A stretch of 63,678 nucleotides of DNA, the filler included, from Guillardia theta CCMP2712 (lineage: Eukaryota > Protista > Cryptophyta), in NCBI RefSeq assembly GCF_000315625.1. It is 4 parts of 4 records of this genome, joined end to end, with 100 filler letters (N's around TTAATTAATTAA, not from the genome) between each part and the next. Parts side by side here need not be neighbours in the genome. Positions count along the whole stretch, not along the records: positions 29,936 to 52,896 come from NW_005434486.1; 3 more parts are not named here. One strand, written 5' to 3'. The notes beneath the pieces are model-generated. The model made no database searches. It saw only the letters and a list, made by a program, of their open reading frames with translations, and had not been told where the DNA came from. The translations under genes and the position numbers were made by a program. The first letter of the stretch is position 1; every line of letters begins with the position of its first letter. Positions 29,936 to 52,040 of this stretch are shown piece by piece.

Positions 29936-32900
29936 TCAGTATTCCGTGGCATCCTCCTCCCTCCCTCCCTCTCTCCCTCCCTCCCTCACATGTCAACCGC
30001 CACTCACCGATCTCGTTATCGTCAAAGGAGGCTCCCATGAATCTGAGCCCGTGCTCTGAGTACAACTTGAACCCTCCTCCTGATATCGCCGAGCAGGTCC
30101 CGCACAAGTTGTCTGTGACCCCCAAGTTCTTGCATGTCTGATCAAGAGGGTTGCAGAACCCCTTGGGCCAGGGCCCAGGCCCAGGCGTGTAAGGAGTCTC
30201 TGGAGGCCACACGCCAAACTGTCCGGCCTTGCCTGCAGTATCGGACGGAGCCGCTGCCGAGACACTTCTGACACGCCTCTCTGCCCCTCTGGTGTCCGGC
30301 CCGCTGTACGTGAAATCCTGGTACACTCCTCCGTAGTTCTGGAATCCCACCAGCACCACGTCGTGGTCCCCAGCTTGAAGGTTGATGGAACCGCAAACTT
30401 TGTCCGCTCCGTGGAGCCCGTCGTTGTTGACGACCAGGTCACTGCCATAGTAGACCAGCGAGCCATCGTCAGAAGTAGAGCAGAAGCTGTAGATGCCTGA
30501 AATCATTATACGCACTTTTCCGTACACCTGCCATGCGTACTTAGCCTCGGGCGTGTTCGGGATCCAATTTCTCAGCTCTCCAAGGGTGCTGAACGCAATG
30601 AAGGAAATCTTGGCCTCGCCGACGAACTTCATGTGCGAGACATCTGGAACAAGCTCGAAGGGTTCGTAGTTGGTGGAGTACATCCGCATGGTCCACTCGG
30701 AGGGAGGAGGAAGGGAGGGGGCAGCCGTCGGCAAGCTGACCATGTGCCGGTACTGGTCCCCAGTGTCCGGGCCGGAGTAGGACGCGCTCTGATAAGCCTC
30801 TCCCCAATGGTTGAAGCCTTCAACGCGAACCTGGTGATCTCCTGGGTCCATCTTGATACTTGCACACTTCCTGTCGGCCCCGTGCAAGCCATCGTTGTTG
30901 ACGATGAGGTTGTCATCGACGAAGAGGTATGAGCCGTCATCAGAGGTCGAGCAGAAAGAGTAGATGCCAGGAGCGTTGATCTTGACGGTTCCGTAGTACA
31001 CCCACACAAAGTTGTTGTCTGGCATGCCAGGAATCATCCTCACAAACTCTCCGTTGTTGGGCACGTAGATATCTTTGTATGTCGCCTCGCCCACGAACGT
31101 CAAGAACGGCCAGTTTGCAAGAGCCATGTTCTGGATGTTGCTTCCTCTGAACAGCCGCACTGTCCATGCTGAGGGCTTGGGGGGAGCAGGTGCCTTGGAG
31201 CTGTCAGATCTGAGGTACCTCTTCACTCTGCCTGTGTCAGGCCCAATGTAGTGCGCAGCCATGTACGCTCCGCCGTAGTGCTGGAAGCCTGGAAGGAACA
31301 TGGCGTGGGTCCCTGCCGAGAGCGAGATATCTCCGCATTTCTCCTGTGCTCCGTGGAGACCGTCGTTGTCAACGACCATCTTGCCGTCTACGTACATGAA
31401 GGAACCGTCGTCGGAAGTGGTACAGAACGTGTATGTGCCGGCCCTGGTGACGTCCAGGTTGCCGTAGATGGCCCACACGTAGTTGTATGACGGCGTCTTG
31501 GGAACGGCGCTACGGAAATCGTCGAGGTCGTGGAAATCGATGTATGGAGTTTTGCCTTCCTCAACAAAGTTCAAGAACGCAAGGTCAGGCGTGTACGTCA
31601 GCTCCTGGGTCTCAGCCTGATACATCCTCATGGTGAAGGACGAAGGTGGAGGCAGGTCAGGTAGCTTGCCCTTGGAGCTGCCCTTACTCATCATCAGCAT
31701 CTCTCCTCCTCCTGTGTCTGGCCCAGCGTAGGTGATGCTCTGGTAGATCCCTCCCCCATGCTGGAAGCCTTCCACAGTGACGGAGTGAGATCCTGCCCGT
31801 AGCTGCGCATTCCCGCAAGCCCTAACAGCTCCATGGAGTCCGTTGTTCTCAACGAGCAAGTCGCCGTTGAGCAGCAGTCGGGACCCATCGTCCGACGTCG
31901 TGCACAAAGAGTAGGTCCCCGCAAACTCAACGTATAGCGACCCGTAGAAGATCCAGCTGTAGTCTGAGCTGGGTGTCTCAGCCACGTACTGACGAAGCTC
32001 TTCCAGGGAGTCGACGCGGACGGTCTCGATGTCCTTGGCGCTTCCAACGAAAGTGACCATGGGGGAGTCAGGGATGACCTGCCTCAGCTGTCAGATCGTC
32101 ACCTCCACGCCCAGCAGAGCCCCACCACTAGAGGTCTGTTCGATCTGAAAACCCGCAGGGCCCAGTCAGACGCCGGAGGCTTTTCTGGCAGGTTCGCCTC
32201 GGCGTCCTCGCTCCTAAGGAGCATCTTGTTGCCCAGGGTGTCTTGGCCCCTTGTCAAGCGTCAGAGCAGCGCGACTAGTCGCCAAGCATGTATACCTCCA
32301 GAAGGCGTGCAGGACGAAGGCGCCCGTGTTAACAAACGCCTTGACTCGGATGCGCACAGTTCCCTTTGTGACGTCAAAAGGGCGGCAGATCTCTCTAGTG
32401 GTGTGCAAGCCGTTGTTGTCAACCACGAGGTTGTCCTCCACAAATAGCTGCGACCTGCGTACGTCTCTCACCTTACACATGAGCAGCTGCTACCAGACCG
32501 TACCCGTCAGATGATGCAGTGCAGAAGTCGTAGGTGCCTCCGTTCTGGACCAGGATGTTTCCGTAGAACTCCACCGCAAAGTTTGACGCAGGCACCCCTG
32601 CGAAGTACTGCAGCAACGTGAGCCACGCGACCAGCCGTACACACGCATAAGTAGGAGGACAAGGTACTGCACTGACCTTGCGGAGTGTCTCGATGCCCTG
32701 GAAGTTGATGTATGGAATAGTGGTGCTCCCAAGGTACTTCATGGCATACATGGATGGGATGCTCAAAAGGGTCCCAGTCGACTCATACACCCGCACAGTC
32801 CAGCTTGATCGTGGTCTCTTGACAGCACCTTCAATCTGCGCACCCGTCACTCGTCTGTGTGGGGACCCTTCCATCATCCGCCAACCTTGAGAGACTGTAC

Positions 32901-35086
32901 GCGGTCGTTCCAGCCCTCCCAGACGAGACAGTCGACTTTTCGTGGGCCGACGTAGACGATCTTGTTACCTTCGAAGTACCTTTGATCGTACATGGTCACC
33001 TGGAGACAGGCCCCGTCAGCTTCATCATCAATCCCAAGGTCGAGATACCGAAAGTTTCTCCGGGATGTACAAGGAGGACAGTGAGTTTGCTTTCAGTCTG
33101 CAGTTATGCAAAGCACACATGTCTTGGTCGTTGTCGCACTCTCCATTGTTGAATACTTCCCATTCACCCTCCGGGAGGATTTGCTTCCATTCGGGGTCGT
33201 TGTTGGGATCTCCGCAGCTGCCCCCGAACACGACTTGATTCTTGTCAGTGCTGAGGTGAAACAGAAACGCACAGACGTCAGCAACGACGCTGAGCATACT
33301 CCCCTTCCCCGAGCTCACCTCGGCAAGCATGCATCCGGAGTGTAGCATTCTTCCCTCAACCGCCTCACGGTCTTGAAGCTCGAACGCACGTTCACCCTCA
33401 TGCCCTGGACGAGCACAAGTCAGCCCCCGCACGGGCACGCCAAGATTAGGTCAGTAGAGGACTGCCGGATCAAGCCGTACCTGGAACTGATCGTTGAGCC
33501 CCCAGCAGCATAAGCCAACATCGTCGGCATGCGTACATCCTTCGCCTCCACAGGTCTTGGGACAGTCGCCCATGTCCTCCTCAGTACCTTTGCCTGTGTG
33601 GAGCATCACAACACGTCCGAGCCGCAGAGACGAGCCTTACAAGCTACACGCGACAGCCATATGGGACCTTTGCCACCACCTTTTCTCAGGAGCTTGCCTC
33701 CTTCTTCGAACCCGATGTTGCGGCAAACCAGGTCGGCGGTGATCTGAGTGAAGCCTACTCCACACACAGTTCCCCAGACCTGAGCAGGACGTCATTAGGC
33801 CTCACACAAGATAGGACGCGAGACTCACTCCATTGTATAGGGTCTCAAGGCGGCAGGCCGAGTAATCACAATCAACAAGGCGGGTGTAGAGGTTTCCACC
33901 GCCAGGGCAGAAGTATCTGCCAGGCTTCCAACTCTCACCGACAGGAGCTGTACAAAGTACTTGAGGATCTAGCACATCGTTGTTTTGCATGGGCATACCT
34001 TCTCCCTGAATGCCATCCGGACCCATCGGGCCACTAATTCCAGTGATTCCGGTGACACCGCTGAAGCCTCTGACGCCTGATGATGTATCACAACTAGATT
34101 GTTCTGCACGCAACCTCCTCACCTGCAGGTCCTGGAAGTCCTTCGATCCCAGGCTTGCCCATGGGTCCTGCGAGGCCCTGAGGACCCTTTGGTCCTTGGG
34201 GCCCTTCAATGCCGTCGGCACCATTAGCTCCCGGGGAGCCATTCATACCTGCGACAAGTCAGTCGATGCTCGATATCTTCCGCGTACAAGTTGTTTCATC
34301 ATCTCTCTCTTCACTATCTGTAGCTTCATAAAGACTGCTTACCAGGCAAGCCGGGTGGACCTCTGCAACGCCGCCAAAAGAGCAAAGGAAGCAAACAAAG
34401 CACATTCAGCTCCTCATCACAGCACACTCTCTCAAAGCTCACTCTGGTCCTTGCACCAAGTGGTATGGAGCGCTGATGTCATCGGTCTCCTTTGTGTTGA
34501 GCTCTACTATCTCATCCTTCACGCCCGACACTGTGGACTTGACATACTCCGACAAATCCTTCTCCTGCTCATCAAGCTTCTCTGACATCTTGGCAGACTT
34601 CTTCAAGGCTTCCATGAGCCTGAAGTCAACATGAGCCAAGCATGCTCTTGGTGAGACACAATCAGATAGAGGGGCTCACCTCTTCATCCTCCTCTTCGAT
34701 ATGCTTTCCTCCTGAAGGAACGACTCGGGAACGTCCGGAGACTGGTCCTCATCACTTACTCCTGCTTGCGTGGAGGGCATGTAGTTGATGCCTCCTGCCT
34801 GCCCGTAGCTTGGAGGAGCTGAGATCTCTCCTTGAGATGAGAGAATCTGCTGTGTGGCTGGCTCCCATAACGCCTGTCCTTGGCTTCCGCCTAGCTCATA
34901 TTCTCCACTGTAAAGTTCGGATGGGGAAGTATGACGCAAGAGCGAGCGGGGAGAGGCGAGAGCGATGAAGACGATCATGGCAGCGAGGCCACCTATGGCC
35001 AAGTAGCTATATGCTCTGCTACCTCGAGCCGTCTGTGCCGTCTCCTCCGGCGCGGAAGGAAGTCTGTCTTCCTCTCCCCGCGCCAT
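29936..35086 (-). CDS. Copy A: type II membrane protein, TM-coiled coil-collagen-SRCR-beta/gamma-crystallin-5xPA14 + Cys-rich C-terminal extension (3' end runs toward gap)
   Basis: [17 protein letters not shown] (TM); 25 Gly-X-Y triplets over 4 exons; [15 protein letters not shown]...VCRNIGF...[10 protein letters not shown]...C...[11 protein letters not shown] (SRCR); NSLSSL...[11 protein letters not shown]...WNDRVQSLK (crystallin); five repeats with YGx..GTYxFC(T/S)xSDDGS...NDGLHG (PA14). Confidence 0.85.
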
Positions 35087-35549
35087 GGGCGGCGGCACTG
35101 TGAAGGGTCGATCCCAAGAGTCAGACCCAAAGAATTAAGTCAAAACAATCAACTGTACCCCCCACCCCCTTTGTGACCCTGGATGCCCTTGACCGGTGAT
35201 GGGAAACTCAAAAGAATATTCAGTTCAAATGGTCTCTGTAAAGTTCAAATGAACAAAAAGATATTCAATGATTTTTCTTGTTTGTTGCGTCAGAGAGTTC
35301 CGAAGTTGAATTTGAGTGTTCGCCTTGTACACAAACAATTAAAAAGTGAGGTTCAGATTTCGGCTCATGTTTACAATATATAAATGAATATATCAAATAT
35401 TTTGGGAAATGCTTTGGATTTGTTTCCCAAAATGCGATATTGTTTTATGCAAGAAAATTTTGCTTTATCAGTACAGTTTGTAGATATATAATTAATCTTT
35501 AAATAGTACGACTTTATATATAAATGAAGTTGAGTATATTTCTGTGGTA

Positions 35550-36960
35550 GTACAACTGCTGCTTGCGAAAAATAAAAAATACGGTAATAAATACCGAGTC
35601 TGCCTCAGAGACGTTTCCGGTCTTCCAGAATGCAGCGGCGGCAGGTGCAGGAGCACAACGCCCAGCATGCCTGTGCAGGGTGAGATCACAATGCAAGATT
35701 AAGCAAGAGTATCTTTCAACATGTTCATCTCGACAACGTGATAACTTCTGGCCTGATTCACAAGACTTACGTTGGTATTTGAGATCACCCTTGTACACCT
35801 TACAAGGATTCTTGCAACCAGGGCCCCACCGTGTGTATGTCTTCTCAAGAAGATGAACTTTTTGGCCTGCAGAAGTGACTTCTCAAGTCATTAAGACTGT
35901 TGCCATGACTGTTCAACAAGATTCTGTTTTATCCAGGAGAAAGTCAAGGGATGGATGGAGCAGCGTGGTCAGCATGAATCAGGTTTCAACTTGGAATTGA
36001 AAGTTTCAGGAAGGTGAATCGCACCAATCACATGAGTAATCAACTCATAATGGAAGCAATGACAGCCATTGCCATGTCATCGGAAACGAATACTCGTTCT
36101 GAACGGTTTGTTGTCAGGTTGTCGGAGTGCAGATAGGTTTTTGATCAGAGAGTGCAAGCCGCCAGCAGAATGGAAGACTGCAGGCGAAAACCAGACGGAT
36201 GTGTGAGCTGTGGTAGATGGATTGAACAAATCTCCAGTCTTCGAAGCAGAATGCATGGATATCCAAGAATGCAGCACCGATACCACATCGGGATGAGATT
36301 GACACATCACGAAAGAGTGTGGAATGAAATGTAGATTTGAACATTATGAATTAATGTAGAATGAAATGTGAGATTGATACATTATGAAAGAATGCAGAAG
36401 GAACTGTGTGATTGATACGTTATGCAAGTACGTGGAATGAATGTAAAATGTGCATCTGGTGTTTGGGTGGTTGTCACAATATTGCCCTGTCACCAGTCTT
36501 GATCTCTTTAGGTGGCTCAAATACATTGTTCAATTGTTGGTGGAATGTTTGATTTTGGGATGTTCTGATTGTTTGTTTCAAACCTTGTCTATCACTTGTT
36601 TCATACCATGGTCATGATTAATTACCACTCAACAACAAATGATTGATTTGGAGCATCTATTCAAACCGAGTAGTAGTTAGGGAGGAGTCTCTCCTTGATC
36701 ACAAATTCCTTCATGATGGAGGGAAAGTAGTTCAATTGTTTGAAAATTAAGGGCATCCTTTGAAATATGCTATGATATACATTCAGGCACCTTTATCACC
36801 ATGTTCTAAGTTGGTGATAATCTCACGTTTACCTCTTTAACGGTTCACTCAATCTTGTCCTTCTCACAACTTACACTTCACAGCCTTACAAACATTACCA
36901 TTCGCCACTTGATCATCTTGGTGTTTGTAAGTGTCTAATCACATGCAAGGTCACGTTCCC
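35550..36960 (-). mobile_element. Possible heavily decayed transposon/retroelement relic in the spacer
   Basis: AT-richer, TG/CA-rich sequence with broken protein-like frames (e.g. HYELITHVIGAIHLPETF). No intact domain. Confidence 0.25.
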
Positions 36961-37218
36961 TTCCTCTGCCCGCATTGCAGCATCTGCGGGACAAGTGAAC
37001 AATCATTATATTTATATTACTCATTCGTACAGAAAATTGTACCTTGCTACCGGGGTAAAACTAAATTTAAGTAGATATTTGTACTGAACATTTTAGCTTA
37101 CCAAGCATTCTGTAGACAAGCAGACGGTCAACGATAGGAGCAAGAGGGGGTAGGGGGTACCTTGTTGAGTAAAATCCAGGAGCCTGCTATCGAAGAGACA
37201 CTTCGGTGCGCTACCGCC

Positions 37219-40200
37219 ATGGCGCGGGGAGTGGAGGACGGACTCCCTTCCGCGCCGGAGGAGGAGGAGGAGGCGCGGAACAGGTGTCGAGGTAGCAGAG
37301 CATACAGCTACCTGGCCATAGGTGGCCTCGCTGCCATGATCGTCTTCATCGCTCTCGCCTCTCCCCGCTCGCTCTTGCGTCATACTTCCCCATCCGAACT
37401 TTACAGTGGAGAATATGAGCTAGGCGGAAGCCAAGGACAGGCGTTATGGGAGCCAGCCACACAGCAGATTCTCTCATCTCAAGGAGAGATCTCAGCTCCT
37501 CCAAGCTACGGGCAGGCAGGAGGCATCAACTACATGCCCTCCACGCAAGCAGGAGTAAGCGACAAGGACCAGTCTCCGGACATACCGCAGTCGTTCCTTC
37601 AGGAGGAAAGCATATCGAAGAGGAGGATGAAGAGGTGAGCCCCTCTATCTGATTGTGTCTCACCAAGAGCATGCTTGGCTCATGTTGACTTCAGGCTCAT
37701 GGAAGCCTTGAAGAAGTCTGCCAAGATGTCAGAGAAGCTTGATGAGCAGGAGAAGGATTTGTCGGAGTATGTCAAGTCCACAGTGTCGGGCGTGAAGGAT
37801 GAGATAGTAGAGCTCAACACAAAGGAGACCGATGACATCAGCGCTCCATACCACTTGGTGAAAGGACCAGAGTGAGCTTTGAGAGAGTGTGCTGTGATGA
37901 GGAGCTGAATGTGCTTTGTTTGCTTCCTTTGCTCTTTTGGCGGCGTTGCAGAGGTCCACCCGGCTTGCCTGGTAAGCAGTCTTTATGAAGCTACAGATAG
38001 TGAAGAGAGAGATGATGAAACGACTTGTACGCGGAAGATATCGAGCAGCGACTGACTTGTCGCAGGTTTGAATGGGGTTCCGGGGCTCAACGGTGCGGAC
38101 GGAGCTCCTGGTCCTCAAGGGCCAGTGGGCCCCCAGGGTTTCTCGGGGGCGATTGGAGTTCCTGGACACGAAGGGAAGAAAGGACTTCCAGGTGAGGAGG
38201 TTGCGTGCAGAACAATCTAGTTGTGATACATCATCAGGGGCCAGAGGGCCTATTGGTGTGACGGGTATCCCGGGCATGACCGGCCCGATGGGTCCGGATG
38301 GCGTTCAGGGAGGAGGTATGCCCATGCAAAACAACGATGTGCTAGATCCTCAAGTACGTTGTACAGTTTCACTAGCTGATAGCTGGAATCCTGGCCGATA
38401 CTTCTGTCCCAGTGGTGGAAACCTCTACACCCGCCTTGTTGATTGTGATTACTCGTCCTGCCGCCTTGAGACCCTATACAATGGAGTGAGTCTCGCGTCC
38501 TATCTTGTGTGAGGCCTAATGACGTCCTGCTCAGGTCTGGGGAACTGTGTGTGGAGTAGGCTTCACTCAGATCACCGCCGACGTGGTTTGCAGAAACATC
38601 GGGTTCGAAGAAGGAGGCAAGGCTCGTAGGAAGGGTGGAGGCCAAGGTCCCATATGGCTGTCGCGTGTAGCTTGTAAGGCTCGTCTCTGCGGCTCGGACG
38701 TGTTGTGATGCTCCACACAGGCAAAGGTACTGAGGAGGACATGGGCGACTGTCCCAAGACCTGTGGAGGCGAAGGATGTACGCATGCCGACGATGTTGGC
38801 TTATGCTGCTGGGGGCTCAACGATCAGTTCCAGGTACGGCTTGATCCGGCAGTCCTCTACTGACCTAATCTTGGCGTGCCCGTGCGGGGGCTGACTTGTG
38901 CTCGTCCAGGGCATGAGGGTGAACGTGCGGTCGAGCTTCAAGACCGTGAGGCGGTTGAGGGAAGAATGCTACACTCCGGATGCATGCTTGCCGAGGTGAG
39001 CTCGGGGAAGGGGAGTATGCTCAGCGTCGTTGCTGACGTCTGTGCGTTTCTGTTTCACCTCAGCACTGACAAGAATCAAGTCGTGTTCGGGGGCAGCTGC
39101 GGAGATCCCAACAACGACCCCGAATGGAAGCAAATCCTCCCGGAGGGTGAATGGGCAAGATTTAGCAACAATGAGTGCGACAACGACCAAGACATGTGTG
39201 CTTTGCATAACTGCAGACTGAGAGCAAACTCACTGTCCTCCTTGTACATCCCGGAGAAACTTTCGGTATCTCGACCTTGGGATTGATGATGAAGCTGACG
39301 GGGCCTGTCTCCAGGTGACCATGTACGATCAAAGGTACTTCGAAGGTAACAAGATCGTCTACGTCGGCCCACGAAAAGTCGACTGTCTCGTCTGGGAGGG
39401 CTGGAACGACCGCGTACAGTCTCTCAAGGTTGGCGGATGATCGAAGAGTCTCCACACAGACGAGTGACGGGTGCGCAGATTGAAGGTGCTGTCAAGAGAC
39501 CACGATCAAGCTGGACTGTGCGGGTGTATCAGTCGACTGGGCCCCTTCTCAACGTCCCATCCATGTACGCCATGAGGTACCTTGGGAGCACCACTATTCC
39601 ATACATCAACTTCCAGGGCACCGAGACACTCCGCAAGGTCAGTGCAGTACCTTGTCCTCCTACTTATGCGTGTGTACGGCTGGTCGCGTGGCTCACGTTG
39701 CTGCAGTACTTCGCAGGGGTGCCTGCGTCAAACTTTGCGGTGGAGTTCTACGGAAACATCCTGGTCCAGAACGGAGGCACCTACGACTTCTGCACTGCAT
39801 CATCGGACGGGTACGGTCTGGTAGCAGCTGCTCATGTGTAAGGTGAGAGACGTACGCAGGTCGCAGCTATTTGTGGAGGACAACCTCGTGGTTGACAACA
39901 ACGGCTTGCACGGCTCCAGAGAGATCTGCCGCTCGTCGTACGTCAACAAAGGCCTTGTTCACATCCGAGTCAAGGCGTTTGTTAACACGGGCGCCTTCGT
40001 CCTGCACGCCTTCTGGAGGTATACATGCTTGGCGACTAGTCGCGCTGCTCTGACGCTTGACAAGGGGCCAAGACACCCTGGGCAACAAGATGCTCCTTAG
40101 GAGCGAGGACGCCGAGGCGAACCTGCCAGACAGGCCTCCGGCGTCTGACTGGGCCCTGCGGGTTTTCAGATCGAACAGACCTCTAGTGGTGGGGCTCTGC

Positions 40201-42116
40201 TGGGCGTGGAGGTGACGATCTGACAGCTGAGGCAGGCGATCCCCGACTCCATCATGGTCACTGCAGTCGGAAGCGCCAAGGACATCGAGACCGTCGGGGT
40301 CAGCTCACTGGAAGAGCTTCGTCAGTACGTGTCTGAGACGCCCAGCTCAGACTACAGCTGGATCTTCTACGGGTCGCTATACGTTGAGTTTGCGGGGACC
40401 TACTCTTTGTGCACGACGTCGGACGATGGGTCCCGACTGCTGCTCAACGGCGAATTGATCGTTGAGAACAATGGACTCCATGGAGCTGTTAGGGCTTGCG
40501 GGAATGCGCAGCTACGGGCAGGATCTCACTCCGTCACTGTGGAAGGCTTCCAGCATGGGGGAGGGATCTACCAGAGCATCACCTACGCTGGGCCAGACAC
40601 AGGAGGAGGAGAGATTCTGATGATGAGTAAGGGCAGCTCCAAGGGCAAGCTACCTGACCTGCCTCCACCTTCGTCCTTCACCATGAGGATGTATCAGGCT
40701 GAGATCCAGGAGCTGACGTACACGCCTGACCTTGCGTTCTTGAACTTTGTTGAGGAAGGCAAAACTCCATACATCGACTACCACGACCTCGACGATTTCC
40801 GCAGTACCGTTCCCAAGACGCCGTCATACAACTACGTGTGGGCCATCTACGGCAACCTGGACGTCACCAGGGCCGGCACATACACGTTCTGTACCACGTC
40901 CGACGACGGATCCTTCATGTACGTAGACGGCAAGATGGTCGTTAACAACGACGGTCTCCACGGAGCACAGGAGAGATGCGGAGATATCTCGCTCTCGACA
41001 GGGACCCACGCCATGTTCCTTCCAGGCTTCCAGCACTACGGCGGAGCGTACATGGCTGCGCACTACATTGGGCCTGACACAGGCAGAGTGAAGAGGTACC
41101 TCAGATCTGACAGCTCCAAGGCACCTGCTCCCCCCAAGCCCTCAGCATGGACAGTGCGGCTGTTCAGAGGAAGCAACATCCAGAACATGGCTCTTGCAAA
41201 CTGGCAGTTCTTGACGTTCGTGGGCGAGGCGACATACAGAGATATCTACGTGCCCAACAACGGAGAGTTTGTGAGGATGATTCCTGGCATGCCAGACAAC
41301 AACTTTGTGTGGGTGTACTACGGAACCGTCAAGATCAACGCTCCTGGCATCTACTCTTTCTGTTCGACCTCTGATGACGGCTCATACCTCTTCGTCGATG
41401 ACAACCTCATCGTCAACAACGATGGCTTGCACGGGGCCGACAGGAGATGTGGAAGTGTCAAGCTGAACCCAGGAGATCACCAGGTTCGCGTTGAAGGCTT
41501 CAACCATTGGGGAGAGGCTTATCAGAGCGCGTCCTACTCCGGCCCGGACACTGGGGACCAGTACCGGCACATGGTCAGCTTGCCGACGGCTGCCCCACCT
41601 CTCCCTCCTCCCTCCGAGTGGACCATCCGGATGTACTCCACCAACTACGAACTCCATCACGTTCCGGATGTCTCGCACATGTCGTACGTCGGGGGGGCCA
41701 AGATTTCCTACATCCAGTTCAGCACCCTTGGAGAGCTGAGAAATTGGGTCCCGAACACGCCTGATTCCAAGTACGCATGGCAGGTGTACGGAAAAGTGCG
41801 TGTGATCATTGCAGGCACCTATACCTTCTGCTCTACTTCTGATGATGGTTCAATTGTCTACTTTGGCAACCAACAAGTTGTCAACAACGACGGGCTGCAT
41901 GGGGGTGTGAAGGTTTGCGGTTCCATCAACCTTCAAGCTGGGGACCACGACGTGGTGCTGGTGGGCTTCCAGAACTACGGAGGAGTGTACCAGGACTTCA
42001 CGTACAGCGGGCCGGACACCAGAGGGGCAGAGAGGCGTGTCAGAAGTGTCTCGGCAGCTGCACCTGCGAGTACTGCAGGCACTTCTGGGCAGTTTGGCAG
42101 GTGGCCTCCGAACTGA
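37219..42116 (+). CDS. Copy B: inverted paralogue, same domain order, ends GRWPPN* after fifth PA14
   Basis: Exons 37219-37634, 37695-37871, 37952-37971, 38066-38191, 38238 onward, and a long last exon through 42116. Same motifs as copy A. Confidence 0.88.
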
Positions 42117-48180: not shown

Positions 48181-49738
48181 CTAGTTTGAGCTCAGATTTG
48201 TTGGTAATGAAGCAGAGTGCTGAGTCTTGTAAATTCGACAAGAGGACTTATGGACTTGACACTAAGCTCCTATTTTGTTTACACACTTTGCGGATAATTT
48301 TCTGTTGCGAATCTTGTTATGCTTTCCCCTCCCTCTTCTCTTTTACTCTACTCTACTCTGCTCGCCTCGCCTCACCTGTCCTCCTCTTTCCTCTCCTCCC
48401 CCCTCCACACTGCCTGATCCCTGTGTCTCTCACTATCTCAATCACTGATCTTCTCCATTCTCGCCAGTTGCAGAGATCGGAACCTCTCAAATCTTGCGAG
48501 CTCGGAAAGATCCTTCTCAACTCCTTCAACCAGTTTCCCGCAGACTGGAAGTACGGATCGCAAGCAGCCAAGCTGAAGCAGGGGCAGCCTGGCGAGGCAA
48601 CGCAGGGCTGCAGCAGGACGGCAAAGAGGAAGAGGAGCTGGCTGAAGAGAGGATGTTTCATGATGTTCAAGTCGCTCCAGACGGCGACGAAGCACAAGGA
48701 GGAGGAAGCGATCGTTCTCCCTCCTCCCCTCTTCATAGCCTGCAGCGCGCTCCTCCGCGCTATCCCGTGGGAGATAGTCTGCCAAGGGTTCACCGTCATG
48801 CGCTCCTTGGGCCTGCACCCGTTCCTGAGGTGCGACGTGGCGAAGGAGGAGAAGAGAGAGGAGGAGAAGGTGGGGCGGCAGGGCAGCACGCAGGCGGAGG
48901 AGAGGAGTCAAGGAATGTGCCTGGTCATCCCGCACAAGTCGAACTGGAGGAAGCAAGACTCGAATTTCTTCGAGAGGAAGAAGGTTGATCACTGAACAGC
49001 TCTCCTCCACTGTTGTCTTGCCTGGTCTCCTCTCCTCTCCTCTCCTCTCCTCTCCTCTCCTCTCCTCTCCTCTCCTCTCCTCTCCTCTCCTCTCCTCTCC
49101 TCTCCTCTCCTCTCCTCTCCTCTCCTCTCCTCGCCTCTCCTCTCCTCTCCTCTCCTCTCCTCTCCTCTCCTCTCCTCTCCTCTCCTCTCTCCTGTAGAAT
49201 GTTTGACGCGTTGTCGTGACAGGGAGCACTAGGGAGAAATTGGCTAACAGCGATGCAGCAAGTAAAGCCCCCGTCTCCTCTCCCTCCCTCTCCCGCCTCC
49301 TGTCTGCTCCCCTCCTCTTCCACTACCGCCTTTTTCCTTCACCCTTCCTCCCCTTTCCTGTCTCTCCTCCTCCTCCTCTTATCACCTCCACCCGCCATGC
49401 TGATCCTTTCATGCAGAGACAGTGGGCGCCACCATGGGACGGAGGAGCAGGAGGAGGAGCAGGGGGAGCAGGGGGAGCAGGAGACGGACCTGACCGCCAC
49501 AACGCCTTCGGCTCTCTGTTCATGCACGCTCCCATCGCGCAGCCCAGCAGGAAAATTTCCCAGCTGAGGAGGAAGTACCGGCTTCCTCCGAGCTTGCAGG
49601 CGCACGTTGTGTTTGTTGAGTCAGAGAAGATCGCGGCGTCCCCTCAGGAATTTGCGGTGAGAGAGGAGGAGAGGAGGATGGGACGGGGGAGGAGAAGGAA
49701 GTGCGATGGACGAGGACGATGCGGCGGCGGGGAGGAGA

Positions 49739-49813
<75 letters not shown>

Positions 49814-52040
49814 GGCAGGGGCAGGGGCAGGGGCAGGAGCAGGAGCAGGAGCAGGGGGACGAGGACGAGGACGAGGGCGAGGAGAAGTGATAGTGTCGAG
49901 GTGTTTGATGCCGCCTGGCAGGTGAGTGTAGACAAGGAGGCAAGAGGACGGGAAGTATTCTTCCTCCTCCCCTACTTCGAGCTGCTCCGCTTCGCAAGTG
50001 TCTTGAGGTGACTGGACCCCCACCCCCCCAACCTCCTCCTCTCCTGGCCCCCCACCCCCCCAACCTCCTCCTCCTCCTCTCTCCTGTTCCTCTTCTCTTC
50101 TGTTCCTCTTCTCTTCTGTTCCTCTTCTCTTCTGTTCCTCTTCTCTCCTGTTCCTCTTCTCTTCTGTTCCTCTTCTCTTCTGTTCCTCTTCTCTTCTGTT
50201 CCTCTTCTCTTCTGTTCCTCTTCTCTTCTGTTCCTCTTCTCTTCTGTTCCTCTTCTCTTCTGTTCCTCTTCTCTTCTGTTCCTCTTCTCTTCTGTTCCTC
50301 TTCTCTTCTGTTCCTCTTCTCTTCTGTTCCTCTTCTCTTCTGTTCCTCTTCTCTTCTGTTCCTCTTCTCTTCTGTTCCTCTTCTCTTCTGTTCCTCTTCT
50401 CTTCTGCTCCTCCTCCTCCTCACCCCTTCCTAACAAACTTCTCTCATCGCTCTTCTCCCCTTCCCCATCATCTCCTCCTCCCGTCTGACCCGTGCACCAG
50501 CGACGCCCTGGCTATGAAAGGAGGATGTACCCTTATCTTCTGCCCTGACTACGCGATCAAACAGTTTGTAACTACGTTGCAGAAGAATTTACAAGAGAGG
50601 TGGGAAATGCTCCTCCTCCTCCTNNNNNNNNNNNNNNNNNNNNNNNNNNNNNNNNNNNNNNNNNNNNNNNNNNNNNNNNNNNNNNNNNNNNNNNNNNNNN
50701 NNNNNNNNNNNNNNNNNNNNNNNCCTCCTCCTCCTCCTCCTCCTCCTCCTCCTCCTCCTCCTCCTCCTCCTCCTCCTCCTCCTCCCTTCCTCCTCCTCCT
50801 CCTCCGTCCTCCTCCTCCTCCTCCTCCTCCTCCTCCTCCTCCTCCTCCTCCTCCTCCTCCTCCTCCTCCTCCTCCTCCTCCTCCTCCTCCTCCTCTCCTC
50901 CTCCTCCTCGTGGTGGTGGTAGTTGTGGTGGTGGTGATGATGACGATGTTGTTGTTGTTGTTGTTGTCGAGGTTATTGCTGAGGTTGAGGATTTCTGAAA
51001 CTAAGAGCTCTCTTCTCTCTTCCTCGCTCTGACATTCTTCTCTGCCACGAGCAGGAAGGACGGCAAGCTCTGTGTCAGCAAGAAGAACGAACAGCAGCAG
51101 GAGCTTGTCACAGAATACCAGAAGATAGTCCAGATCACAGCACAGGACATCATGAAAAGGCTCGACCTTCCCGTCGCTCTACTCTCCACTAGCATGCTGG
51201 CTCCGATCGTCTCTGCCAGGAAGGATGTGGGAAATCCTGTCGTTCACTCTTCTCCTACGCTCCCTGCTCCTCCCTCCACCTCTCCTCCTGCTGCTCCGAA
51301 GGTGAAGGCGGGCGGTGAAGAGGAGGGAGGGAGGAGGGAGGAGCAGCGGGAGGCCGCTGCCGTCGCCCAGGCTGCTCCGGAGGGGAGGAAGTGGGCGGAG
51401 GGAGAGGACGAGAGGATGGGGAACGCGGAGAAGGAGGTGGAGAATCGCAGGCTAGACCATACCAAAGTTGCTGACGTCATCGCCAAGTTCCGAGAGTCTT
51501 CGGAGACGCTGGAGGAAACTGACGAAGAGACGGAGAGGCCGCTGGGGGAAGACGCTGTCAGCGAGCTCCTGGTGCAGGACAGGAACTTCGATGCTGCTTC
51601 CAACAATGAGATGGAGGAGTCGGACGACGACACTAGGAGGTCGTCCATGCTGGAGGAGCAGGGGGAGGCCGGGAGGATAGACAACGTAGAGTCTCCAGCG
51701 TTGAACAGCATGACGGACTTCGATGGCATGCAGGACACGCAGGATGTATGCTCTCATGCTCTGATGGTCTGACGGCTGACTGTGCTCGCAGGGGTCGGAC
51801 AAGCGGGATGATGGGTCGAGCAAGACGATGGTGGTGGAGGATGCGGACGAGGTGGTGGAGGAGAAGGAGGAGGAGGAGGAGGGAGGAGAGGATGGAGAGG
51901 GAACAGAAAAAGACGGTCAGATCGAGCTGTTTGGACCCGACGAGAACCCGAACAGTCCGGTGCAAACCAACTTATCAAAGTCGGAGTTGCACACCAGCGA
52001 TGATGGCTTCGTTCACTCGCCAATCGAGGTTGTGAAGTGA
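43188..52040 (+). CDS. Very large alpha-helical (TPR-like) protein with ~4.9 kb first exon; possible CHAT/separase-like segment; acidic C-terminus
   Basis: 1645-codon open frame with TPR-like units (LYRQLAMVCTEHGDYERSLRYYSIVL, VSDILVEHGDFAQAEQILLAAI). Downstream exons include LFIACSALLRAIPWEIV...VMRSL and end SPIEVVK* at 52040. Confidence 0.8.
49027..49192 (+). repeat. (CTCCT)n intronic microsatellite
   Basis: Perfect pentamer array. Confidence 0.95.
50080..50410 (+). repeat. (CTCTTCTGTTCCTCTT)n 16-bp intronic minisatellite
   Basis: About 20 near-perfect units. Confidence 0.95.

What the first reader, a model, noticed from the sequence alone, without database searches (positions are those of the whole stretch)
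38066..38410. Paralogues have identical introns but synonymously saturated collagen exons
Seen (hand count): collagen exon 38066-38191 vs its partner 34123-34248 has 47 mismatches in 126 nt with no indels, and 11 of 13 complete Gly codons differ at the third position. The adjacent 46-nt intron (38192-38237 vs 34077-34122) is identical, and the preceding 94-nt intron has 2 differences. Divergence starts at base 3 of the exon and resumes in the first ~45 nt of the next two exons. This reverses the normal pattern. Inference: either old paralogues are homogenised by short-tract gene conversion across the inverted repeat, with selection protecting copy-specific exon islands, or exons were overwritten from a spliced (cDNA) template of a distant family member, i.e. 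a receptor diversification mechanism.
Basis: partly seen in the sequence, partly recalled or inferred. Interest (0 to 1): 0.85.

Follow-up and report, generated by a model that had tools for sequence, protein, structure and literature searches.

The report
Gene pair: identical introns, old exons
Two head-to-head copies of a cell-surface receptor gene in the alga Guillardia theta keep erasing each other's differences by gene conversion, except in certain coding stretches, which is a very clean example of a process already known from primate colour-vision genes.

Summary
The piece is the start of Guillardia theta CCMP2712 scaffold JH993152.1. It carries two head-to-head copies of a 16-exon gene (type II membrane anchor, coiled coil, collagen, SRCR, five PA14 repeats). 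The copies form a 4,387-nt gap-free inverted repeat around a 2.2-kb unique spacer.

Between copies, introns differ at 6 of 884 sites (0.7%) and exons at 197 of 3,503 (5.6%). Exon 4 differs at 47 of 126.

An independent 2021 DNA run spans the spacer in one contig and shows about 2x depth on shared parts and about 1x on each island. This is not a mis-assembly. An RNA contig confirms seven of the introns directly.

Metagenome contigs from a related lineage settle the mechanism. That lineage also has both exon types. Exon differences sort by type (71 sites against 1) and intron differences sort by lineage (8 against 1).

The islands are therefore old: dS is about 0.8, against 0.077 for the lineage split. 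The introns were homogenised afterwards. This is concerted evolution by gene conversion between the arms, with selection preserving copy-specific coding islands, as in red/green opsins and RHD/RHCE.

No third-party or cDNA donor was found. The left copy is intact and under constraint but was not seen in RNA.

The parts
37266..41652 (+). Right arm (R) of the gap-free 4,387-nt inverted repeat
   Evidence: the repeat finder I1, 95% complementary; mismatch map
30662..35048 (-). Left arm (L) of the inverted repeat. The gene copy reads on the minus strand. Its ORF is intact but its 3' end is cut by the scaffold start at 29936
41661..42109 (+). Distal continuation of the repeat (partner 30202-30650), 87% identical after a 3-nt indel. 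R-L dS is 0.335, so this part is less recently homogenised
35049..37265 (.). Unique AT-richer spacer between the two 5' ends. It is not palindromic. It is spanned by one contig in an independent DNA run and is partly transcribed (35625-36372, 36643-36966)
   Evidence: no Rfam family or tRNA
37219..42116 (+). R gene, GUITHDRAFT_166530 (1321 aa), 16 exons: cytoplasmic tail, TM, coiled coil (E1-E2), collagen (E3-E5), SRCR (E6-E8), PA14 repeats (E12-E16). It is expressed
   Evidence: gene model; Pfam; NCBI model; spliced RNA contig
38066..38191 (+). Exon 4 (collagen), the strongest island: 47/126 mismatches to L, pS 0.59, pN 0.29
34123..34248 (-). L-copy exon 4, the partner of the above
38192..38237 (+). 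Intron 4 (46 nt), identical in R and L. It differs at 8/46 between the two types in the other lineage
38238..38315 (+). Exon 5 (collagen) island, 19/78 mismatches
38358..38456 (+). Exon 6 island (start of SRCR). It begins 9 nt inside intron 5, at a type-specific site shared across lineages
38583..38643 (+). Exon 7 (SRCR) internal island, 12 mismatches
39156..39172 (+). Exon 10 micro-island, 9 mismatches in 17 nt
39912..39961 (+). Exon 14 (PA14 repeat 1) island, 17 mismatches. The other lineage's contig is R-type at all 17
40237..40307 (+). Islands at the start of exon 16, beginning at the second base of the exon in this model (the acceptor is not confirmed by RNA)

Best explanation
R and L are an old, head-to-head paralogue pair that evolves in concert. 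Recombination between the two arms of the inverted repeat repeatedly copies one arm onto the other. Mostly this is short-tract gene conversion, probably with occasional crossovers that flip the middle. It erases neutral differences, so the introns and most of the coding sequence are nearly identical within this genome. Conversion tracts that reach into certain coding stretches are removed by selection, because the two copies need different sequences there. These stretches are the collagen exons E4-E5, parts of the SRCR domain, and short patches in the PA14 repeats. They therefore keep a divergence about ten times older than the split from the nearest sampled lineage. Shown: the anatomy, the two real copies, the by-type sorting of exon sites against the by-lineage sorting of intron sites, the ages, and purifying selection on both types. 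Inferred: that selection, rather than a mechanical barrier, sets the sharp island edges, and what the functional difference between the copies is.
For: (1) Two real copies exist: one contig spans the spacer, and depth is 2x on shared parts and 1x on islands in an independent DNA run. (2) The introns are not constrained. At 46 of 884 intron sites R = L but the metagenome contig M (L001) differs (5.2%). (3) The other lineage has both types. M2 (L005) is R-type and M is L-type in E4-E7. Site patterns in exons are 71 by type against 1 by lineage; in introns they are 1 against 8 (Fisher p = 2.5e-9). (4) In that 919-nt region, exons differ by 16.4% (R-L) and 15.9% (M2-M) between types but only 3.0-3.2% within a type across lineages. 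Introns differ by 0.8% (R-L), against 6.5% (M2-M) and 4.8-6.5% across lineages. (5) Ages: dS is 0.077 for homogenised codons against M, 0.80 for the E4-E6 island between types, and 0.335 for the distal part. In E4, R-L (0.37) is as large as the distance to Hanusia-like transcripts (0.28-0.39). (6) Both types are constrained: omega is 0.29 between types and 0.12 for L against M. (7) Conversion went both ways. In I3, only M2 is divergent, so R now carries the L/M version. In I4, mainly M is divergent, so L now carries the R/M2 version. (8) Micro-islands of 5-20 nt persist inside long identical sequence, where no mechanical barrier to heteroduplex is expected. (9) The same signature is documented for red/green opsins, with introns homogenised within species and exons grouping by orthologue, and is attributed to selection against conversion (PMC3924837).
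Against: Cleaning a 46-nt intron between exons that are 37% and 24% divergent needs tracts of about 19-50 nt whose ends fall within a few bases of both splice sites. That is demanding, and I could not measure tract lengths in this organism. The L copy was not seen in nine RNA-like assemblies that hold R, so what selection acts on in L is not shown directly. The second lineage is known only from short-read metagenome contigs from two samples. These may mix strains, and their long-range phase is uncertain. Placement of the 12 larger clusters in exons is only modestly significant on its own (p about 0.045).
Confidence: 0.77

Rival explanations
1. The conversion process is the same, but the islands persist for a mechanical reason and not through selection. 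Once a stretch is strongly diverged, mismatch-repair rejection of heteroduplex stops exchange at its edge. Identical sequence is then homogenised right up to the island, and the island is frozen.
For: Island edges are very sharp. The L copy was not seen expressed, which weakens the case for selection on it in culture.
Against: Micro-islands of 5-20 nt lie inside hundreds of identical bases and would not block heteroduplex. Both types show omega 0.12-0.29. In the other lineage, introns I3 and I4 are themselves 8-17% diverged between types, and in CCMP2712 they were cleaned while the exons beside them were not. A purely mechanical barrier would not distinguish intron from exon.
Confidence: 0.1
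2. The exons were overwritten from a spliced (cDNA) template, or from a distant family member's gene, after a recent duplication.
For: In cDNA coordinates E4, E5 and the first 90 nt of E6 form one continuous divergent tract of about 294 nt, interrupted in the genome by two near-identical introns.
Against: Both island types occur in a second lineage, while intron variants are lineage-specific. The duplication and the types therefore predate the split, and intron homogenisation is needed anyway. A type-specific site lies inside intron 5 at 38358. Most other islands are internal to exons. The only other full-length G. theta paralogue found is 63-75% identical with no donor patch. Conversion by cDNA is expected to delete introns rather than keep them; this last point rests on established models of intron loss, not on a test here.
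Confidence: 0.04
3. The pair is a programmed two-cassette variation system. L is a silent archive and R is the expressed copy. Frequent conversion or flipping between the arms creates clonal receptor variants.
For: R is expressed and L is not seen in RNA, yet L is intact and constrained. The metagenome contig M joins L-type E4-E10 to R-type E12-E15 and R-type 3' flank. In run X3, depths of the two E4 versions are unequal (82 against 43).
Against: There is no direct sign of mixed arrangements within a culture. The reference, a 2011 run and a 2021 run agree with each other. Long-range phase in a short-read metagenome contig can be an assembly artefact. Unequal contig depth can be noise. With only two cassettes the repertoire is small. 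L may simply be expressed in a life stage or condition that was not sampled.
Confidence: 0.06
4. The pattern is an assembly artefact: collapsed or chimeric arms, or two alleles joined as a false inverted repeat at a scaffold end.
For: The repeat lies at the very start of the scaffold, and the left copy is cut by the scaffold edge.
Against: An independent DNA run spans the spacer and both arm junctions in one contig with no differences. Depths fit two copies. Each exon version is joined to the same intron sequence in its own contig. Both exon types also occur in unrelated metagenome assemblies.
Confidence: 0.01

Closest known systems
Primate red/green (L/M) opsin gene pair under gene conversion
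   Same: Paralogues lie close together. Their introns are homogenised within a species, so they group by species. Particular exons keep fixed differences and group by orthologue. This is read as selection against conversion producing a peak of divergence (PMC3924837). The by-type and by-lineage site patterns here are the same signature.
   Different: The opsins are tandem, about 24 kb apart, and differ at a handful of tuning sites. Here the copies are inverted and head-to-head, 2.2 kb apart. There are at least 17 islands. The main island is near synonymous saturation (pS 0.59) and is as old as a genus-level split, yet the introns next to it (46-94 nt) are 98-100% identical.
RHD/RHCE and the two-locus conversion-with-selection models (Innan 2003; Teshima and Innan 2008, as cited in PMC3924837)
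   Same: Theory predicts high divergence confined to selected segments, with low divergence elsewhere, in duplicates that exchange sequence.
   Different: I did not fit the model. Conversion rate, tract length and selection strength are unknown for this organism.
Arm-to-arm gene conversion in palindromes, such as the primate Y-chromosome ampliconic palindromes
   Same: Inverted arms around a unique spacer are kept nearly identical by intrachromosomal conversion. This comparison rests on general knowledge; papers on the topic were listed but I did not read them.
   Different: Y palindromes are homogenised throughout. Here defined coding islands escape.
Animal class A scavenger receptors (SR-AI, MARCO, SCARA5), for the protein architecture only
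   Same: The order of parts matches: N-terminal cytoplasmic tail, one TM segment, coiled coil, collagen triple-helix region, SRCR domain (Pfam; TM and coiled coil by inspection).
   Different: Five PA14 repeats follow the SRCR domain. The organism is a cryptophyte alga. Common descent with the animal receptors was not tested, and the resemblance may come from domain shuffling.
COL4A1/COL4A2-type head-to-head collagen gene pairs
   Same: Two collagen-containing paralogues are arranged head-to-head around a short shared upstream region. This rests on general knowledge.
   Different: There is no evidence here for co-expression or for mixed trimers. Only R was seen in RNA.

Membership tests
Concerted evolution by interlocus gene conversion with selection-maintained divergence islands (opsin / RH type) | Two paralogous copies are truly present in one genome | tested here: met
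   One contig spans the spacer, and depth is 2x on shared parts and 1x on islands in an independent DNA run
Concerted evolution by interlocus gene conversion with selection-maintained divergence islands (opsin / RH type) | In neutral sequence, paralogues within a genome are more alike than orthologues between lineages | tested here: met
   Introns: R-L 0.7-0.8% against 4.8-6.5% to M or M2. R = L but M differs at 46 of 884 sites. ABAB patterns occur in I4-I7
Concerted evolution by interlocus gene conversion with selection-maintained divergence islands (opsin / RH type) | In the islands, orthologous types are more alike than paralogues (types predate the lineage split) | tested here: met
   Exons E3-E8: 3.0-3.2% within a type against 16% between types. 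71 AABB sites against 1 ABAB. This was tested only for the 919 nt covered by M2
Concerted evolution by interlocus gene conversion with selection-maintained divergence islands (opsin / RH type) | The islands are under selection: coding constraint on both types, and a functional difference between copies | tested here: inconclusive
   Omega is 0.29 between types and 0.12 for L against M, which shows constraint. A functional difference between the copies was not tested, and L was not seen in RNA
cDNA-templated (retro-) gene conversion | A donor transcript or gene matches the converted tract | tested here: not met
   No near-identical donor was found among G. theta paralogues or database relatives. 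The whole genome could not be scanned
cDNA-templated (retro-) gene conversion | Tract limits coincide with exon limits and never enter introns | tested here: not met
   A type-specific site shared across lineages lies at 38358 inside intron 5. Most islands begin and end inside exons
Programmed cassette or inversion variation systems | Alternative arrangements coexist within a clonal population | not testable with these tools
   The three data sets agree on one arrangement
Class A scavenger receptor architecture | Type II TM, then coiled coil, then collagen, then SRCR, in that order | tested here: met
   Pfam finds Collagen, SRCR and PA14. The TM segment and heptad-rich stretch were seen in the translation. 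Homology to the animal family was not tested

The most novel reading that the evidence does not exclude
The pair is a two-cassette recombinational switch. The intact but silent left copy serves as an archive. Conversion or flipping between the inverted arms places alternative collagen, SRCR and PA14 segments behind the one active promoter. This would give clonal variation of a surface receptor in a free-living alga.
Probability: 0.06. Interest if true: 0.8.

Novelty: new member of a known kind. Interest (0 to 1): 0.42.

Why it matters
This is an unusually clean natural example of the tug-of-war between gene conversion and selection. Introns of 46-94 nt are 98-100% identical while the exons touching them carry divergence as old as a genus. 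The islands act as a ready-made map of the residues that must differ between the two receptors: the collagen X-Y positions, one SRCR loop, and a recurring patch after the NNDGLHG motif of the PA14 repeats. They therefore point to where function, such as ligand or partner choice, should be tested. The case also shows active arm-to-arm conversion in a cryptophyte nuclear genome. It warns that trees or dating from such gene pairs depend entirely on which segment is used. It does not reveal a new mechanism.

Tried and rejected
- Third-party donor. The only other full-length paralogue found in G. theta (GUITHDRAFT_144953, locus L004) is 63-75% identical at DNA level, with no high-identity patch. 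Database relatives are 48-57% identical.
- cDNA overwriting. Rejected as the main process, for the reasons given under rivals.
- Constraint on the introns themselves. Rejected: they differ by about 5% from the other lineage.
- Positive selection or hypermutation after a recent duplication. Rejected: omega is below 1, synonymous sites are near saturation in E4, and both types exist in another lineage.
- Two alleles of one locus. Rejected by the contig across the spacer and by the non-homologous upstream regions.
- The 50%-clustered representative search gave only distant PA14 proteins and did not help.
- Rfam and tRNA scans of the spacer found nothing.
- Two literature searches found no earlier description of this locus, or of a collagen-SRCR receptor in Guillardia.
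- I did not run GENECONV. The four-sequence site patterns answer the same question more directly.
- No complex prediction was made, because I do not claim that the two proteins bind.

Full report
**What is there.** The piece (window 29936-52896) is identical to the first 22 kb of Guillardia theta CCMP2712 scaffold JH993152.1. A gap-free inverted repeat of 4,387 nt joins 30662-35048 to 37266-41652 at 95% identity. It continues more diverged (87%, after a 3-nt indel) to about 30202 and 42109. Between the arms lies a unique, AT-richer 2.2-kb spacer.

Each arm is one copy of a gene, and the two copies are head-to-head. The right copy (R, plus strand, 37219-42116) is the annotated GUITHDRAFT_166530, 1321 aa. 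The left copy (L, minus strand) has an intact reading frame through all exons but runs off the scaffold start.

I built a 16-exon model with GT-AG introns of 46-94 nt. A spliced RNA contig from run X6 shows the joints of I1 and I4-I9 at those coordinates.

The protein has, in order:
- a short N-terminal tail, one hydrophobic segment and a heptad-rich stretch (by inspection);
- a collagen triple-helix region (E3-E5);
- an SRCR domain (E6-E8);
- five PA14 repeats (Pfam).

**The observation.**
- 47 of 126 mismatches in exon 4, with no indel;
- 11 of 13 Gly codons differing at the third base;
- intron 4 with 0 differences in 46, and intron 3 with 2 in 94;
- divergence starting at base 3 of the exon.

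Over the whole repeat the contrast is general. Exons differ at 197 of 3,503 sites and introns at 6 of 884 (Fisher p = 3e-13). Mismatches fall into 43 clusters, 17 of them with three or more mismatches. All 17 lie in exons, except one that starts 9 nt inside intron 5 and a 3-site cluster in intron 11. Synonymous divergence is 0.59 in E4 and still 0.06 in exons outside E4-E6, against 0.007 in introns.

**Not an artefact.** An independent 2021 DNA run (X3) gives one 2,371-nt contig covering 34972-37342 with no differences. That is the whole spacer plus 77 nt of each arm, up to where the arms become identical. Contig depth is about 71 on the spacer, 134-143 on shared arm segments and 43-86 on each island version.

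Each E4 and E5 version sits on its own short contig. Those contigs run about 30 nt past the last distinguishing site into the same intron sequence on both sides, so intron 4 is read from both flanks in both copies. The head-to-head arrangement, the two copies and the identical introns are therefore real.

**The deciding evidence: a second lineage.** A protein search with the last exon found a metagenome contig, M (L001, 4,592 nt, ENA project PRJEB17505). It covers the gene from the end of E1 to past the stop, introns included. At 46 of 884 intron sites R and L agree and M differs (5.2%). So the introns are free to change between lineages and are not conserved for their own sake.

I then used a stop-free reading frame that runs through E4, I4, E5, I5 and E6 as a query. 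This found a second contig from the same project, M2 (L005, 919 nt), which is R-type in E4-E7, whereas M is L-type there.

Site patterns in the four-way alignment:

| | Sort by type (R+M2 against L+M) | Sort by lineage (R+L against M2+M) |
|---|---|---|
| Exon sites | 71 | 1 |
| Intron sites | 1 | 8 |

Fisher p = 2.5e-9.

Pairwise differences in the same 919 nt:

| Comparison | Exons | Introns |
|---|---|---|
| R-L (between types, this genome) | 16.4% | 0.8% |
| M2-M (between types, other lineage) | 15.9% | 6.5% |
| R-M2 (within type, across lineages) | 3.0% | 6.5% |
| L-M (within type, across lineages) | 3.2% | 4.8% |

Both island types therefore predate the split of the two lineages, and the introns were homogenised after it. 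The direction can be read in two cases. In intron 3 only M2 is divergent, so R now carries the L/M version. In intron 4 mainly M is divergent, so L now carries the R/M2 version. Exchange went both ways.

**Ages and constraint.** Codons identical in R and L differ from M at dS 0.077 and dN 0.006. That dates the lineage split. The E4-E6 island has dS 0.80 between types, about ten times older, with omega 0.29. L against M in the same island gives dS 0.117 with omega 0.12. The distal, less homogenised part gives dS 0.335.

I also compared intron-less Hanusia-like transcripts (L006 and L007, which are 99.7% identical to each other). In E4 the R-L distance is 0.37. That is as large as R-Hanusia (0.39) and larger than L-Hanusia (0.28). 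In E8, R and L are identical and both are 0.20 from Hanusia. The collagen island is thus about as old as the genus-level split.

**Mechanism.** The simplest account that fits all of this is concerted evolution. Recurrent short-tract gene conversion between the inverted arms erases neutral differences. Tracts that enter certain coding stretches are removed by selection.

This is the signature described for primate red/green opsins. There the introns group by species and the exons by orthologue, giving a peak of divergence in exon 5. It has also been modelled for RHD/RHCE (PMC3924837).

The sharp island edges follow if only tracts confined to the introns survive. The edge-most differences of E4, E5 and E6 are mostly amino-acid changes.

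Three points favour selection over a purely mechanical barrier:
- Micro-islands of 5-20 nt persist inside long identical sequence.
- Both types are under constraint.
- In the other lineage introns 3 and 4 are themselves 8-17% diverged between types. In CCMP2712 they were cleaned while the adjoining exons were spared.

What the copies do differently is not known.

**The cDNA idea.** In cDNA coordinates E4, E5 and the first 90 nt of E6 form one continuous divergent tract, which is what made the idea attractive. But the types and the duplication predate the lineage split, and intron homogenisation is needed in any case. One type-specific site shared across lineages lies inside intron 5 (38358). 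Most islands are internal to exons. The only other full-length paralogue found in the genome (GUITHDRAFT_144953) is 63-75% identical, with no donor patch. I could not scan the whole genome, so a donor is not strictly excluded.

**Expression and exchange of position.** Nine RNA-like assemblies (runs X6-X14) hold 0.58-0.72 of the words of the R stretch. That is roughly its exon share. The same runs hold at most 0.02 of the words of the L-specific islands, while the 2011 genomic runs hold 0.77-1.00 of them. In X6 the L-specific islands have zero depth. So R is expressed and L was not seen expressed, although L is intact and L-type sequence is constrained.

Contig M carries L-type E4-E10, R-type E12-E15 and R-type 3' flank, and is a fine mosaic in E16. 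A crossover between inverted arms would produce exactly such a swap. However, short-read metagenome contigs can switch copy wherever the copies are identical for longer than the assembly word, so this long-range phase is tentative. The short-range phase is safe, because introns shorter than the assembly word are read together with their flanking exons.

These points leave a small probability for a cassette-like switch, which I give as the novel case.

**Verdict.** It is a new and extreme example of a known evolutionary process, not a new mechanism.

Noticed in passing
window 37219-42116 (R) and 29936-35095 (L): The protein has the part order of animal class A scavenger receptors (type II TM, coiled coil, collagen, SRCR), followed by five PA14 repeats, in a cryptophyte alga. 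Relatives with Collagen+SRCR+PA14 occur in Hanusia and in many metagenome or transcriptome proteins at 48-57% identity. No paper in the library links Guillardia, scavenger receptor and collagen.
   Followed up: partly
window 33829-34248 (L-specific islands): The left copy is intact and its type is under purifying selection. Its specific words are nevertheless absent from nine RNA-like assemblies that contain the right copy. It may be silent in culture or specific to a life stage.
   Followed up: partly
window 35625-36372 and 36643-36966 (spacer): RNA contigs (run X6) and a few raw RNA reads (run X24) lie in the spacer between the two genes. First-mate strands suggest divergent transcription around 36490. 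There is no convincing ORF, Rfam family or tRNA there.
   Followed up: partly
window 37257-37371 and from 37617 / 37718: In DNA run X3, three contigs match short parts of E1/E2 at 95% or more and then continue into unrelated sequence (loose ends). This suggests other loci in the genome share short near-identical pieces of this gene. The contigs themselves could not be read.
   Followed up: no
window 34096-34322 vs 37992-38218: In run X3 the L-type E4 contig has depth 82 and the R-type contig 43 (E5: 86 against 60). The sum is close to the depth of the shared parts. This may be noise, or it may be a hint of copy heterogeneity in that culture.
   Followed up: no
L001 1-460 (window 37607-38065 equivalent): The metagenome contig M has no differences from CCMP2712 in introns 1-3 (234 nt) but about 7% in introns 4-15. 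The contig may be a chimera of strains, or that segment was exchanged between lineages.
   Followed up: no
window 39156-39172: The E10 micro-island can be aligned as a 1-nt deletion plus a 1-nt insertion four bases apart (as the reads tool laid it) rather than as 9 substitutions. That would be a short compensated frameshift between the copies.
   Followed up: no
window 42117 onward vs 29936-30200: R stops at 42116. The L reading frame continues for at least 90 more residues (Cys-rich) to the scaffold edge, and the Hanusia-like protein is 1552 aa. The R model may therefore lack 3' exons; the X6 transcript contig is about 270 nt longer than the annotated CDS.
   Followed up: no
runs X15, X18-X20: Freshwater and lake metagenomes hold up to 0.47 of the near-identical words of this gene from what I take, from general knowledge, to be a marine alga. 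This could be contamination, use of the alga as prey or feed, or a close freshwater relative.
   Followed up: no
window 48975-49200, 49700-49880, 50000-50900: Long microsatellite-like arrays, (CTCTC)n, (GAGCAG)n, a 16-nt unit and (TCC)n, lie downstream of the neighbouring gene.
   Followed up: no
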